A DNA stretch of 63,135 nucleotides, filler included, from Reticulomyxa filosa (lineage: Eukaryota; Protista; Foraminifera), in assembly GCA_000512085.1 (NCBI GenBank). It is 22 parts of 22 records of this genome, joined end to end, with 100 filler letters (N's around TTAATTAATTAA, not from the genome) between each part and the next. Parts side by side here need not be neighbours in the genome. Positions count along the whole stretch, not along the records: positions 38,576 to 41,181 come from ASPP01014647.1; 21 more parts are not named here. One strand, written 5' to 3'. The notes beneath the pieces are model-generated. The model was given only the letters and a program-made list of their open reading frames with translations, was not told the origin of the DNA and ran no database searches. This document shows positions 38,576-41,181 of this stretch, one piece after another. A program made the position numbers and the translations under genes. Every line of letters begins with the position of its first letter. Within the stretch, counting starts at the first letter, position 1.

Positions 38576-40460
38576 GCGGTGGGCGTTGGTGCCTTGGTGG
38601 CCTATAATAAACATCAAACATCATTTAAAAAATAAAAAAACATCAAAAAAACTTAACATTTTTTTCATTTTTTGTTCACAGGTTTGTGTACCCGTTGGAT
38701 GCGAGGCGAGGTCGTTGGGGACTTGGTGGCCTATAAAACAAATTAAATATTATTTAAAAAAGAAAAAAACAAAAAAGAAAAACTTAACATATATTTTTTG
38801 TTTGTACACGGGTTGGGAACCCGTTAGAGCTTCGGTGGGAGGTGGTGCCTTGGCGGCCTATAAAATACAACAAGTGTCATTAAAAAAATAAAAAAACAAA
38901 TTAAAAAAAAACATAACTTTGTTTTTTTTTAATATACACGGGTTGGGAACCCGTTGGAGCGCGTGCGGTGGGCTGTGGGGCCTAGGTGGCCTATAAAATA
39001 CACAAAACACCATTAAAAAAAAGAAAAAAACCAAAAAAAAAACATAACATTATTTTTATTTTTTGTTCACGGGTTGGGGCACCCTTTGGAGCAGCGGCGG
39101 GAGTTGGTGGGCCTTGGTGGCCTATAAAACAAATCAAACATCATTAAAAAAATAAAAAAGCATAAAAAAAAAACTTAACATTATTATTTTTTTTTGTTCA
39201 CAGGTTGGATACCCGTTGGAGGCGATGCGGAGTGCGTGGGGTCTTGGTGGCCTATAAAACACATCTAACGTCATAAAAAAAATAAAAAAAAGAAAACAAA
39301 TACTTAACAATTTTTTTATTTTTAGTTCACGGGTTAGTTACCCGTTGGAGCAGTGGCTTGAGTGTGATTGGCCTTGTTAGCCTATAAAACATGACAACCA
39401 TTAATTAGTAATACAAATAATATGAAACAAAACATACTTTTTTTTATTATTGGACACGGGTTTGGACCCGTTGGATATTGAGAGTTTGGCATTGGGACTT
39501 GGTGGCATATATAACAAATTAACATCATTAAGAAAAATAAAAAACATTTGAATGAATTTAACTTTATTTTTTTTTTTTGGTCCACGGGCTTTGGTACCCG
39601 TTGTAGCAGTTGCAGTAGTGGGGTGGGCCTTGGTGGCCTATGCAACAAATCAAAAATTATTAAATGAAAAAATAAATAAAACAGAAACATACTTTTTTTT
39701 TTTATTGTGTACACGGGTTGGGTACCCGTTGGAAGAGTTTCGTTGGTCGTTGGTGGCCTATAAAACATAACAAACGTCGTTAAAAATAAAAAAAACATAG
39801 AACATAAACATACTTTTTTTTTTAATGGACACAGGTTGGTGCACCCGTTGGAAATGGAACGGTTGGAGTGGGATCTGCTTTGGTCACCTATAAAACATAA
39901 CAACCTTAATTAAATATTTAAAAACATAGAACAAAACATACTTTTTATTATTATTATTGACACGGGTTTGGTCCCCGTTGGATGAGGAGTGGTGGGCATT
40001 TGGAATTCAGTGGCCTATAGGACAAATTAAACATCATTAATAAAAGAAAGAAACTTAAAAAAAAACTTAACATTATTATTTTTTTTTTTGTTCACGGGTT
40101 TGAGTTCCCGTTGGAGCAGCGGCGTGAGTGTGTGGTGCATTTGTGACCTTTGCAACAAATCAAAAATTATTAAATGAAAAAAACATGTTATATAAACATA
40201 CTTTTTTTATTTATTGTGTACACGGGTTGAGTACCCATTGGAGAATGAGCGTTGTGCCTTGGTGCTATGTAAAACATATCAAACGTTATTATAAAAGTAT
40301 TGAAAACATTAAAAAAAACTTAACATTTTTTATTTTTTTTTATTCACGGGCTCGAGTACCCGTTTGAGCATCGGCAGTGATAGTGTGGTGGTGTCTTGAT
40401 GACCTATGAAATGTTGCAAGCGTCATTAAAAAAGAAAATGACAAAAGTAAAGCTTAACTT
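38576..40460. repeat. Tandem array, ~15 units of ~118-132 bp: conserved CACGGGTTGGGTACCCGTTGGA + variable 14-27 nt core + conserved CCTTGGTGGCCTATAAAAC + A-rich/T-rich spacer
   Basis: The CAC(G/A)GG anchor recurs at 38677, 38807, 38937, 39068, 39199, 39328, 39455, 39583, 39712, 39830, 39961, 40093, 40221 and 40345, with a partial unit at the contig start. Confidence 0.95.
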
Positions 40461-41181
40461 TTTTTTTGACTGCCATATGCCGGTTGCTGCTCGTTGGAGC
40501 GTGTTTTGATCATCGGTGTTCATTAATATAATGACCCCGATGTAATCGGTGCATTGCGTCGACTTGTCTGTACCCCGGTTTCGTGTTTGCTGGGGTCGAC
40601 TTGTCTGGCACCTGTAAATATCACACAAATCATTTTAGGTGAGTTATTAAATAAATAAATATATACCTTGTTTTTGGAGGTGGGTGTGAACCCATTTGTT
40701 TTGTTGGTGGAATGCGTGATTGTGATAGTGTGATAGTTGTTGTTGATGGGATTGATATGGTTGATATGGTCGAACGTCATATGATGGGAGGGTATGTGGT
40801 GTACATTGTGGTAATAATAATTGTGGTTGAGCATAGAGGGTATCATTATTGTAGTTGTCGCTGTCATTGTTTTGCGTGGTTGCGATAGGGATGTTGTGAT
40901 TGATTATGTGACTGGTGTGGTGATATGGTTGGTGCATTGGTGGCGTTGCTGTGGTATTGGTAGTGGATTATGTGTGAAATATGTTGGTATATATTTGGGG
41001 GATGCTAGTGTAGGTGATATATGTGTGGTAGTGGTATATGGCTATAATATGGGCGGTGGAGCTGTTGGTACATGTGTGGTGTATCTGAAGCGGGTGTGGC
41101 AGTGATGTGGTAGTGGTTATTGTTGTTTGGTTGTGTGGTGGTGGTGTGGCTAGGGTGGGAATATTGTGGCTGGTGTGGGTG
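38576..41181 (-). CDS. Putative Pro/His/Gln/Thr-rich gene (or pseudogene) whose 3' part is the tandem mini-exon array
   Basis: A C/A-rich coding-like region (40667-41181) is followed by a clean intron 40666-40612 (GTATAT...TTACAG), an exon, and an intron 40458-40404 (GTTAAG...CATAG). Most subsequent units carry a ...TATAG acceptor and GT donors. Frames are not cleanly maintained. Confidence 0.5.

What the first reader, a model, noticed from the sequence alone, without database searches (positions are those of the whole stretch)
38576..40460. Tandem array of mini-exon/intron cassettes with a hypervariable core between conserved splice-flanking arms
Seen: ~15 units of ~129 bp, each with a conserved arm, a core that differs in every copy (e.g. 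tgcgaggcgaggtcgttgggga, gcagcggcgggagttggtggg, agagtttcgttggt, aatggaacggttggagtgggatctg) and a second conserved arm. On the minus strand most units have a TTTTATAG acceptor just before the GC-rich block, followed by two candidate donors (CCC|GTG and GTTAAG/GTATG). With the GTG donor the blocks are 51, 48, 51, 51, 50, 51, 49, 52, 43, 55, 51, 52, 41 and 56 nt, so the commonest length is 17 codons. One acceptor (39507) is mutated. The array lies downstream of a Pro/His/Gln/Thr-rich exon and two 55-nt introns, and the exon between those introns already contains the core motif GCTCCAACG. Inference: this is a gene built from serially duplicated mini-exons whose middle diversifies while the splice arms are conserved. 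It is a candidate combinatorial (exon-skipping or mutually exclusive) diversity locus for a Pro/Thr-rich protein, and the strongest candidate for an undescribed system in this window.
Basis: partly seen in the sequence, partly recalled or inferred. Interest (0 to 1): 0.85.

Follow-up and report, generated by a model that had tools for sequence, protein, structure and literature searches.

The report
Tandem exon-like blocks with mini-introns
A real 130-base tandem repeat alternates C/A-rich blocks with very uniform 54-60-base spacers that carry all the marks of short introns, but no reading frame is kept, so it is probably not a protein-diversity generator.

Summary
The minus strand of 38576-40667 carries 14 full units, one unit cut by the piece's edge and two degenerate units of a ~130-bp repeat. 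Each unit has conserved arms, an unalignable C/A-rich core and an AT-rich spacer.

New here: the conserved 5' splice-like site is GTTAAG/GTATGT, not CCC|GTG. It gives 16 intron-like intervals of 54-60 nt, with GT in 16/16, AG in 15/16 and a YTRAY motif near -26 in 11/16. The sequence switches from A-rich to T-rich exactly at this site. The two "upstream 55-nt introns" belong to decayed units of the same array, so they are not independent evidence for a gene.

The core, A-tract and T-tract are no more alike than their base composition predicts. Only the arms and the splice-like signals are conserved.

The coding reading fails:
- The arm-to-arm distance modulo 3 is scattered (7/4/3).
- No single donor gives an open frame, and unit 9 is closed in all frames.
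- The "Pro/His-rich exon" has no 3-base periodicity and no homologue.

Best reading (about 45%): an amplified exon-plus-minimal-intron module in a minus-strand transcript that is non-coding or decayed, with cores turning over by slippage. Main rival (about 30%): an unspliced satellite with a palindromic box. No RNA or DNA reads could be obtained.

The parts
38576..40403 (-). Main array: 14 full units (u01 at 40403 to u14 at 38730) plus a unit cut by the piece's edge (38601-38576). Unit lengths are 117-139 bp.
   Evidence: TRF period 130, 14 copies; unit table; alignment A1 with 73% mean column identity.
40404..40611 (-). Degenerate unit 0. It has an expanded 153-nt block (40611-40459) ending in GCTCCAACGAGC...A9, then a 55-nt intron-like interval (40458-40404, GTTAAGC...CATAG).
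   Evidence: The 3' arm has decayed and CCYGTG is absent, but GT, AG and the 55-nt length are kept.
40612..40705 (-). Degenerate unit -1. It has a 3'-arm-like stretch (CAAATGGGTTCACACCCACC), a short A-rich stretch and a 55-nt intron-like interval (40666-40612, AAG|GTATAT...TTACAG).
   Evidence: The tail of the interval (AATGATTTGTGTGATATTTACAG) resembles the array spacers by eye.
39693..39757 (-). Representative exon-like block (u06): 5' arm GCCACCAAC, core, 3' arm TCCAACGGGTACCCAACCCGTG, A-tract. All blocks (GTTAAG/GTATGT donor): 40403-40325, 40264-40202, 40147-40072, 40014-39942, 39887-39814, 39757-39693, 39637-39563, 39505-39438, 39381-39309, 39251-39180, 39121-39049, 38990-38918, 38857-38789, 38730-38658.
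   Evidence: Block lengths are 63-79 nt (mean 71.9, sd 4.3).
39638..39692 (-). Representative intron-like interval (55 nt, GTATGT...TTTAAT...TTGCATAG). All 16: 40666-40612, 40458-40404, 40324-40265, 40201-40148, 40071-40015, 39941-39888, 39813-39758, 39692-39638, 39562-39506 (AG lost), 39437-39382, 39308-39252, 39179-39122, 39048-38991, 38917-38858, 38788-38731, 38657-38602.
   Evidence: Lengths are 54-60 (mean 56.6, sd 1.9). GT is present in 16/16, AG in 15/16 and YAG in 14/16. YTRAY starts at -26 in 11/16. T is 45-71% inside the interval; A is 45-85% in the 20 nt before it.
39713..39729 (-). Representative small hairpin in the 3' arm (ACGGGT, 4-6-nt loop, ACCCGT). It is present in every full unit, and the GT of the CCC|GTG candidate donor lies inside its 3' strand.
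   Evidence: Coordinates for all units. 96.4% of cells are paired, with 6 single-sided changes that all give G-U on the minus strand, and no compensatory double change. RNAalifold predicts only this helix.
39506..39507 (-). The single lost acceptor: TATATG|CC where other units have TATAG|GCC.
40676..41181 (-). C/A-rich, G-poor flank (on the + strand G 39%, T 38%, A 18%, C 6%). It contains a 5'-arm-like GCCACCAATGCACCAAC at about 40930-40946.
   Evidence: Composition. Stops occur in all frames; the longest open stretch is 100 codons, 40967-40668. No periodicity. No homologue. Arm-like repeat D11.

Best explanation
The array is a tandemly amplified 'block plus minimal intron' module on the minus strand of a transcribed locus.

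Each unit offers the spliceosome a complete U2-type intron of about 56 nt. It has a GT(T)AAGT or GTATGT donor, a TTAAT-type branch site about 23 nt from the end, a T-rich tract and a YAG acceptor. This intron sits between C/A-rich blocks of about 72 nt. Selection keeps the splice signals, the intron length and the two block ends. The 5' arm abuts the acceptor. The 3' arm holds a 6-bp hairpin that buries a decoy GTG.

The block interior is cryptically simple C/A-rich sequence that turns over by replication slippage and unequal exchange. The spliced product would be a long C/A-rich, G-poor RNA without a maintained reading frame. That makes it a non-coding RNA, an untranslated region, or the decayed remains of a low-complexity coding region, not a combinatorial protein-diversity device.

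Shown here: the anatomy, the pattern of conservation and the absence of a frame. Inferred: transcription, splicing and the role of the arms.
For: (1) All 16 intervals, including the two in decayed edge units, keep GT (16/16), AG (15/16) and a length of 54-60 nt (sd 1.9). YTRAY sits at -26 in 11/16.

(2) Pairwise identity against the value expected from base composition:
- 5' arm .72 vs .31
- 3' arm .81 vs .27
- donor motif .69 vs .40
- branch region .73 vs .39
- acceptor .78 vs .34
- core .35 vs .34
- A-tract .61 vs .61
- T-tract .55 vs .58
Only the arms and the splice-type signals are constrained.

(3) Composition flips from A/C-rich to T/G-rich exactly at the GTTAAG/GTATGT site.

(4) Where the TATAAAA-like reading on the + strand is lost (CTTTGCAAC, CTATGCAAC, CTGTAAAT), the AG is still kept. 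This favours an acceptor over a TATA box.

(5) In nearest-neighbour unit pairs the core mismatches 57% and the interval 21%. Cores contain short internal duplications, for example ACCAACGACCAACG in u06 and ACTGCAACTGC in u07. The same exon-faster-than-intron pattern, attributed to slippage, is reported for the Flag silk gene (PMC3563967, citing Hayashi and Lewis 2000).

(6) No frame is maintained.
Against: There is no expression evidence. No sequencing run was listed, so splicing is inferred from sequence only.

There is no independent gene evidence. The upstream 'exon' has no periodicity or homologue, and the upstream 'introns' are part of the repeat. The signals could therefore be inherited from one founder unit.

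GTTAAG has T at +3 and A at +5, so it is a good donor only if one U is bulged. An A9-A13 run at every block end is not predicted by splicing. A transcript with 16 introns and no ORF is unusual. No relative of the array was found anywhere, so conservation across species could not be tested.
Confidence: 0.45

Rival explanations
1. The array is an unspliced satellite or minisatellite. It could be subtelomeric, centromeric or an rDNA-spacer-type sub-repeat. Its conserved element would be a protein-binding palindrome (ACGGGT-N4-6-ACCCGT, containing the Myb-type site CAACGG/CCGTTG) set in bendable A-tract/T-tract DNA. The core would be a spacer whose length and composition matter but whose sequence does not. 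The splice-like motifs would be coincidental or inherited from the founder unit.
For: The array is head-to-tail, and its edge units are more decayed than the interior ones. A 4-unit (about 510 bp) higher-order duplication is present (D6 and D7). The best-conserved stretch is the palindromic 3' arm. The strand asymmetry (G/T-rich + strand) continues into a 500-bp TG-rich flank that ends in GGTGTGGGTG at the contig edge. There is no ORF and no homologue. The piece is a short contig that breaks inside the repeat. From general knowledge, the + strand arrangement of a T-run followed by G(T/G)ACCCGT resembles Reb1/TTF-I-type terminator sites. This was not tested.
Against: This reading does not explain why GT and AG are the best-kept G positions in the spacer (16/16 and 15/16). 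It does not explain why the interval length is held to 54-60 nt while its sequence is saturated, or why the A-to-T switch falls exactly at the GT. It also does not explain why the decayed edge units keep these features after losing the palindrome. Satellites normally homogenise whole monomers; here part of the monomer is unalignable.
Confidence: 0.3
2. One reading: the blocks are protein-coding cassette or mutually exclusive mini-exons of about 17 codons, using the CCC|GTG donor, in a Pro/Thr-rich protein. Conserved arms would serve as splice-flanking or recognition sequences and a diversifying core would supply variety. This would resemble Dscam clusters, schistosome micro-exon genes or the multi-core peptide precursors of sponges.
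For: Seven of 14 units read A-T-K-A...P-T-G-(T/S)-Q-P in one frame. Seven of 14 GTG-donor blocks are multiples of 3 (five of 51 nt, two of 48 nt). In u11 and u14 a 1-nt shorter core goes with a 1-nt longer loop, keeping the total at 51. The core is far more diverged than the neighbouring intron-like sequence. A precedent exists for conserved recognition sequence plus hypervariable core with conserved introns (PMC10945851).
Against: The arms are in three different relative frames (7/4/3). Seven of 14 multiples of 3 is not above chance (binomial tail about 0.15, my own estimate, not a tool result), and equal lengths are shared by descent. Two of the four units that are both in-frame and a multiple of 3 carry stops (u09, u12). 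No single donor gives an ORF. The GTG donor never has G at +5, lies inside the hairpin and is absent from the two edge units. The only open stretch entering the array region ends at a TAA at 40525-40523, before u01. No periodicity or homologue was found upstream. The sponge recognition motif FMPDEVKKQ is absent from every frame.
Confidence: 0.12
3. The array holds small-RNA or promoter units read on the + strand. The conserved palindrome would be an upstream element, the core a spacer and CTATAAAA a TATA box. The product would be a short A-run/CTTAAC/T-run hairpin RNA ending at the T-run. A related variant is an array of guide-like RNAs.
For: TATAAAA lies about 50 nt downstream of the palindrome on the + strand. 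The A-tract and T-tract form an inverted repeat around CTTAAC/CATAC (I2-I8).
Against: The TATA quality is lost in five to six units while the AG is kept. The predicted RNA is low-complexity, and its sequence is no more conserved than composition predicts. Whole-unit folds are no more stable than shuffles (z from -1.4 to +1.4). Rfam and ARAGORN find nothing.
Confidence: 0.05

Closest known systems
Iterated exon-intron modules of spider silk genes (Nephila Flag, Argiope MaSp2)
   Same: One exon-plus-intron module is amplified in tandem within a single gene. The introns stay nearly identical while the simple-sequence exons diverge faster, which is attributed to slippage (PMC3563967, citing Hayashi and Lewis 2000).
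   Different: Silk exons are long and keep a reading frame. Here the blocks are about 72 nt, no frame is kept, no protein relative exists and transcription is unproven.
Sponge proline-rich macrocyclic peptide precursor genes
   Same: They have repeated units of conserved recognition sequence plus hypervariable core, with similar introns between the repeats. The authors suggest recombination and alternative splicing as sources of diversity (PMC10945851).
   Different: Those precursors have a signal peptide, a fixed frame and the FMPDEVKKQ recognition motif, and their introns are long. None of these features is found here.
Cassette or mutually exclusive exon arrays (Dscam clusters, schistosome micro-exon genes, titin PEVK exons)
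   Same: They are tandem arrays of short, duplicated exons with conserved splice sites and variable interiors.
   Different: By general knowledge those exons are phase-symmetric or of equal length class and sit in a verified ORF. Here the lengths modulo 3 are scattered and stops are present.
Satellite DNAs with a conserved protein-binding box (CENP-B-box-type) and minisatellites with G-rich strand asymmetry
   Same: They have tandem units of about 130 bp, one short highly conserved (here palindromic) box, A-tracts, strand asymmetry and higher-order duplication.
   Different: Part of the monomer is unalignable between neighbours, while GT/AG and the spacer length are kept. The genomic copy number is unknown.
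Repeat-built non-coding RNAs (e.g. Xist A-repeat: GC-rich hairpin cores separated by U-rich linkers) and tandem snoRNA host genes (SNORD115/116 units of exon plus intron)
   Same: They contain many copies of a small conserved hairpin separated by U-rich sequence, or non-coding exon-intron units amplified in tandem (general knowledge; 10.1101/476010 for the SNORD arrays).
   Different: No small RNA fits in these 56-nt intervals, no Rfam family matches, and the hairpin shows no covariation.

Membership tests
U2-type GT-AG spliceosomal (minimal) introns | GT at the 5' end, with a donor close to GTRAGT | tested here: met
   GT is present in 16/16 intervals. Donors are GTATGT/GTATAT in 6, GTTAAG in 7, GTTATG in 2 and GTTAAA in 1. 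The GTT types fit the consensus only with one bulged U.
U2-type GT-AG spliceosomal (minimal) introns | YAG at the 3' end, preceded by a pyrimidine-rich tract | tested here: met
   AG is present in 15/16 and YAG in 14/16. T makes up 45-71% of the interval.
U2-type GT-AG spliceosomal (minimal) introns | Branch-site motif YTRAY 15-40 nt upstream of the acceptor | tested here: met
   The motif starts at -26 in 11/16 intervals, lies elsewhere within -16 to -39 in 4, and is absent in 1.
U2-type GT-AG spliceosomal (minimal) introns | Actual removal from a transcript | not testable with these tools
   The look-up of sequencing runs listed no run, so read laying could not be used.
Protein-coding cassette or mutually exclusive exon array | Exon lengths congruent modulo 3, with arms in a constant frame | tested here: not met
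   Lengths modulo 3 are scattered under each of the three candidate donors. The arm-to-arm distance modulo 3 splits 7/4/3.
Protein-coding cassette or mutually exclusive exon array | An open reading frame through the exons | tested here: not met
   Every single-donor model dies at a stop. Codes 1, 6, 10, 29 and 30 were tried. u09 is closed in all frames.
Protein-coding cassette or mutually exclusive exon array | A recognisable protein product or homologues | tested here: not met
   There were no hits for the 100-codon open stretch in 1.84 billion representatives, the Atlas or Pfam. There were none for a read-through ORF of the array.
RiPP-like multi-core peptide precursor (sponge PRMP type) | Signal peptide plus recognition sequences in a fixed frame around each core | tested here: not met
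   No frame is fixed, and FMPDEVKKQ is absent from all frames (motif from PMC10945851).
Satellite or minisatellite DNA | Head-to-tail tandem monomers | tested here: met
   TRF reports period 130, 14 copies.
Satellite or minisatellite DNA | Whole-monomer homogenisation and high copy number at heterochromatic loci | tested here: inconclusive
   The arms and spacers are homogenised, but the core is not. Copy number and genomic location are unknown.
Known structured RNA families (snoRNA, tRNA, SL RNA and others) | A match to a curated covariance model or tRNA model | tested here: not met
   The best Rfam hits are far below the gathering scores. ARAGORN found 0 genes.

The most novel reading that the evidence does not exclude
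The array is a working eukaryotic cassette system. Splicing of uniform 56-nt introns would assemble or select among blocks whose about 25-nt cores are deliberately diversified between two fixed recognition arms. The product would be either frame-tolerant Pro/Thr-rich peptides or cores for processed short peptides, or a non-coding RNA that displays many different C/A-rich 'guide-like' segments, each next to the same small hairpin.
Probability: 0.1. Interest if true: 0.85.

Novelty: new variant of a known kind. Interest (0 to 1): 0.45.

Why it matters
If the intervals are really spliced, this is a compact natural example of an amplified exon-intron module. In it, selection visibly acts on the splice signals, the intron length and the block ends, while the block interior is free to change. 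That makes it useful for studying exon definition and minimal-intron constraints, and for seeing how such arrays arise and decay. It would also be a caution for gene finders: perfect-looking mini-exons need not code. If it is not spliced, it is a satellite whose conserved positions happen to mimic a full intron. In that case its palindromic box deserves a binding-protein search. Either way, the headline claim of a combinatorial protein-diversity locus is not supported by the sequence.

Tried and rejected
- **Exact-product look-ups.** Four ATG ORFs of the piece are not on record.
- **Read-through array ORF.** The 173-aa ORF found no homologue in the 5.8-billion-protein search.
- **Arm pattern scans.** In metagenome, viral and prokaryote genome collections the pattern gave only single chance matches per locus, or none.
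- **Phage and plasmid BLAST.** No match.
- **Literature string search for the arm.** Only chance primer matches.
- **Known RNA families.** Rfam and tRNA searches found nothing. C/D snoRNA was rejected because the UGAUG-like and CUGA-like motifs are not conserved between units. Spliced-leader RNA genes were rejected because the would-be leader is the variable part.
- **Organellar coding on the G/T-rich strand.** Mitochondrial codes 4, 5, 9 and 14 give no clean ORF.
- **Ciliate nuclear codes.** No frame opens beyond chance.
- **Mixed donors.** Choosing a donor unit by unit can be made to give an ORF. I discount this as over-fitting in G-poor sequence.
- **Collapsed-consensus artefact.** Judged unlikely, because 14 neighbouring units differ by 18-49% and carry distinct cores. 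It could not be tested with reads.
- **Joined sequences.** Joined models were only translated inside scripts to count stops. All database searches used uninterrupted stretches by reference.
Full report
**Scope.** Only 38576-41181 was used; the rest of the window is filler. Joined models were only translated inside scripts to count stops.

**1.
- Tandem Repeats Finder reports a 130-bp period with 14.0 copies at 38576-40368. It also reports periods of 260 and 391, which reflect unit sub-types.
- GC content swings between about 10-15% and 50-67% every half unit.
- On the minus strand I placed 14 full units (u01 at 40403 to u14 at 38730) and one unit cut by the edge at 38601.
- Arm-based patterns occur 4-5 times against 0 in 100 shuffles.

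**2. Anatomy of the unit (minus strand, alignment A1).**
- The 5' arm is GCCACCAAG(G).
- A core of about 15-30 nt follows. It is C 49%, A 25%.
- The 3' arm is TCCAACGGGTACCCAACCCGTG.
- An A-tract of about 20 nt follows.
- Then comes GTTAAGT, GTTATGT or GTATGT.
- A T-rich stretch follows.
- Then comes TTAATGA(T/C)G.
- The unit ends with GTTTGATTTGTTTTATAG.

**3. What is conserved.** Pairwise identity was compared with the value expected from each segment's base composition.

| Segment | Observed | Expected |
|---|---|---|
| 5' arm | .72 | .31 |
| 3' arm | .81 | .27 |
| GTTAAG/GTATGT motif | .69 | .40 |
| TTAAT region | .73 | .39 |
| 3' T/G-rich tract | .70 | .46 |
| Acceptor | .78 | .34 |
| Core | .35 | .34 |
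| A-tract | .61 | .61 |
| T-tract | .55 | .58 |

- The core, A-tract and T-tract are no more alike than their composition predicts. The array is therefore old or fast-evolving at unconstrained positions, and specific islands are held.
- The core is "hypervariable" relative to its flanks. In nearest-neighbour unit pairs it mismatches at 57%, against 21% for the intron-like interval (pooled odds ratio 5). Two caveats apply: neighbours were chosen by interval identity, and the T-rich composition inflates that identity.
- Cores are not all unrelated. u03/u07/u09/u11 share ...C(T/C)GCTCCAACGG-type cores (60-78% alike) and u10/u14 are 63% alike.
- Core and interval similarities are discordant, which points to mosaic exchange.
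- Many cores contain short internal duplications (u06 ACCAACGACCAACG, u07 ACTGCAACTGC, u14 CCTCGCCTCGC). This is the signature of slippage.

**4. Which splice-like donor.** Three GT positions were compared.
- CAACGG|GT is missing in u03 and u04.
- CCC|GTG is present in all 14 full units. It never has G at +5 (GTGAAC, GTGTAC, GTGTCC and similar), gives 75-83-nt intervals, and lies inside the 3' strand of the hairpin.
- GTTAAG/GTATGT gives intervals of 54-60 nt, mean 56.6, sd 1.9.
- The two "upstream 55-nt introns" are the intervals of two further, decayed units of the same repeat:
  - The block ending at 40459 ends in GCTCCAACGAGC...A9.
  - The block ending at 40667 ends in CAAATGGGTTCACACCCACC...AAAAACAAG.
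  - Both intervals resemble the array's spacers.
  - These edge units have lost the palindrome and have no CCYGTG. They still keep GT, a YAG end and a length of exactly 55 nt.
- Over 16 intervals, GT is present in 16/16, AG in 15/16 and YAG in 14/16, and YTRAY starts at -26 in 11/16. The sequence switches from A-rich (45-85% A in the preceding 20 nt) to T-rich (45-71% T) exactly at this GT.
- Interval length (sd 1.9) is held more tightly than block length (sd 4.3), even though interval sequence is saturated. This is the behaviour expected of minimal introns.
- On the + strand the acceptor could be read as a TATA box. However, in the units where TATAAAA is spoiled (CTTTGCAAC, CTATGCAAC, CTATGAAAT, CTGTAAAT, CTATAGGAC) the AG survives. 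This favours the acceptor reading.

**5. The hairpin.**
- ACGGGT / ACCCGT with a 4-6-nt loop is the only helix RNAalifold predicts for the unit.
- 96.4% of cells pair. The six single-sided changes all give G-U on the minus strand and would give C-A on the + strand.
- There is no compensatory double change. Four of the changes are CpG-to-TpG transitions, so this is only weak evidence for an RNA-level role.
- Whole units fold no better than shuffles (z from -1.4 to +1.4).
- The same palindrome could be a DNA site. It contains CAACGG/CCGTTG, a Myb-type core, and on the + strand (T/G)ACCCGT preceded by a T-run. These resemblances are from memory and were not tested.

**6. The coding test fails.**
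- The distance from the acceptor to the end of CAACGG is 44, 30, 40, 40, 43, 32, 40, 38, 40, 39, 39, 40, 37 and 39 nt. Modulo 3 these split 7/4/3, so the two arms are read in all three relative frames.
- Block lengths modulo 3 are scattered under each of the three candidate donors.
- Every single-donor, full-inclusion model hits a stop in each starting frame. This also holds under codes 6, 10, 29 and 30.
- With the conserved donor, the blocks carry A9-A13 runs and many TAA/TGA codons. u01 and u09 are closed in all three frames. For u09 this happens within GGGTAACTAACCCGTGA, which has no homopolymer that sequencing error could excuse.
- u12 has TAG inside the 5' arm.
- In favour of coding:
  - Seven units read ATKA...PTG(T/S)QP in one frame.
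  - Five GTG-donor blocks are exactly 51 nt, twice through a compensating 1-nt change in the core and the loop.
  - This could reflect a length constraint of any kind, and the equal lengths are largely shared ancestry.
Positional composition is uniform (chi-square p=0.47; p=0.05 for the last 300 nt).
- That flank has no Pfam, Atlas or 1.84-billion-representative hit.
- Its one open stretch (40967-40668), if spliced at 40667|40611, ends at a TAA at 40525-40523, ahead of u01.

**7. Relatives and expression.** Nothing could be obtained.
- No sequencing run was listed.
- No exact ORF is on record.
- The read-through ORF has no homologue.
- Pattern scans of metagenomes, viral contigs and prokaryote genomes gave only chance single hits, or none.
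- There is no phage or plasmid match.
- The source organism remains unknown. By composition and signals it is a eukaryote with very AT-rich short introns.

**8. Interpretation.**
- *Best reading (about 45%).* This is an amplified exon-like block plus minimal intron, in a minus-strand transcript that is non-coding or decayed. Splice signals, intron length and block ends are under constraint, and block interiors turn over by slippage.
- *Closest precedents.* The closest precedent is the iterated exon-intron modules of spider Flag and MaSp2 genes. There the introns are nearly identical and the simple-sequence exons diverge faster (PMC3563967). Sponge macrocyclic-peptide precursors are a precedent for conserved flank plus hypervariable core with similar introns (PMC10945851). 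The present array fails the frame-based features that define those coding systems.
- *Main rival (about 30%).* It is an unspliced satellite or minisatellite with a palindromic protein-binding box, perhaps subtelomeric or of the rDNA-spacer type. Support comes from the TG-rich flank, decayed edges, the 4-unit higher-order duplication and the short contig. This reading leaves the GT/AG, length and composition-switch pattern unexplained.
- *A + strand small-RNA or promoter-unit reading* keeps about 5%.

**9. Verdict.** Interest is moderate. The anatomy is unusual and clean, but it has no organism, expression data or relatives. The sequence itself argues against the most exciting claim.

Noticed in passing
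window 39653-39786 vs 40162-40295, and 39026/39541/40051: There is a higher-order duplication of about 510 bp (four units). u02 and u06 are 81% alike overall, 85% alike in the interval and only 46% alike in the core. Both share the same 12-nt core deletion.
   Followed up: partly
window 40676-41181: A 500-bp flank shows extreme strand asymmetry (+ strand G 39%, T 38%, C 6%). It ends at the contig edge in GGTGGTGGTGTGG...GGCTGGTGTGGGTG, which resembles irregular TG1-3-type telomere sequence. This raises the possibility of a subtelomeric location. It was not tested.
   Followed up: no
window 40595-40606 and 40558-40569 (minus strand): AGACAAGTCGAC occurs twice, 37 nt apart, in the expanded block of degenerate unit 0. 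Each copy contains a SalI site (GTCGAC). A short inverted repeat, CCGAT-TAC-ATCGG, lies next to them at about 40537-40549.
   Followed up: no
every unit, e.g. window 39164-39198, 38900-38933: The A-tract before and the T-tract after the GTTAAG/GTATGT motif form an inverted repeat of 13-19 nt. This places the candidate donor in the loop of a possible A-U hairpin.
   Followed up: partly
units u01-u14: There are two linked unit sub-types. GTGAAC goes with GTTAAG/GTTATG (u01, u03, u09, u10, u11, u14). GTGT(A/C)C goes with GTATGT (u02, u04, u05, u06, u08). The two types partly alternate, which explains the 260-bp period that TRF reports.
   Followed up: partly
window 40930-40947: A copy of the 5' arm with the start of a core (GCCACCAATGCACCAAC, compare 38601-38585) lies inside the C/A-rich flank, with no intron-like interval in front of it. 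The flank may be made of old units that lack spacers.
   Followed up: no
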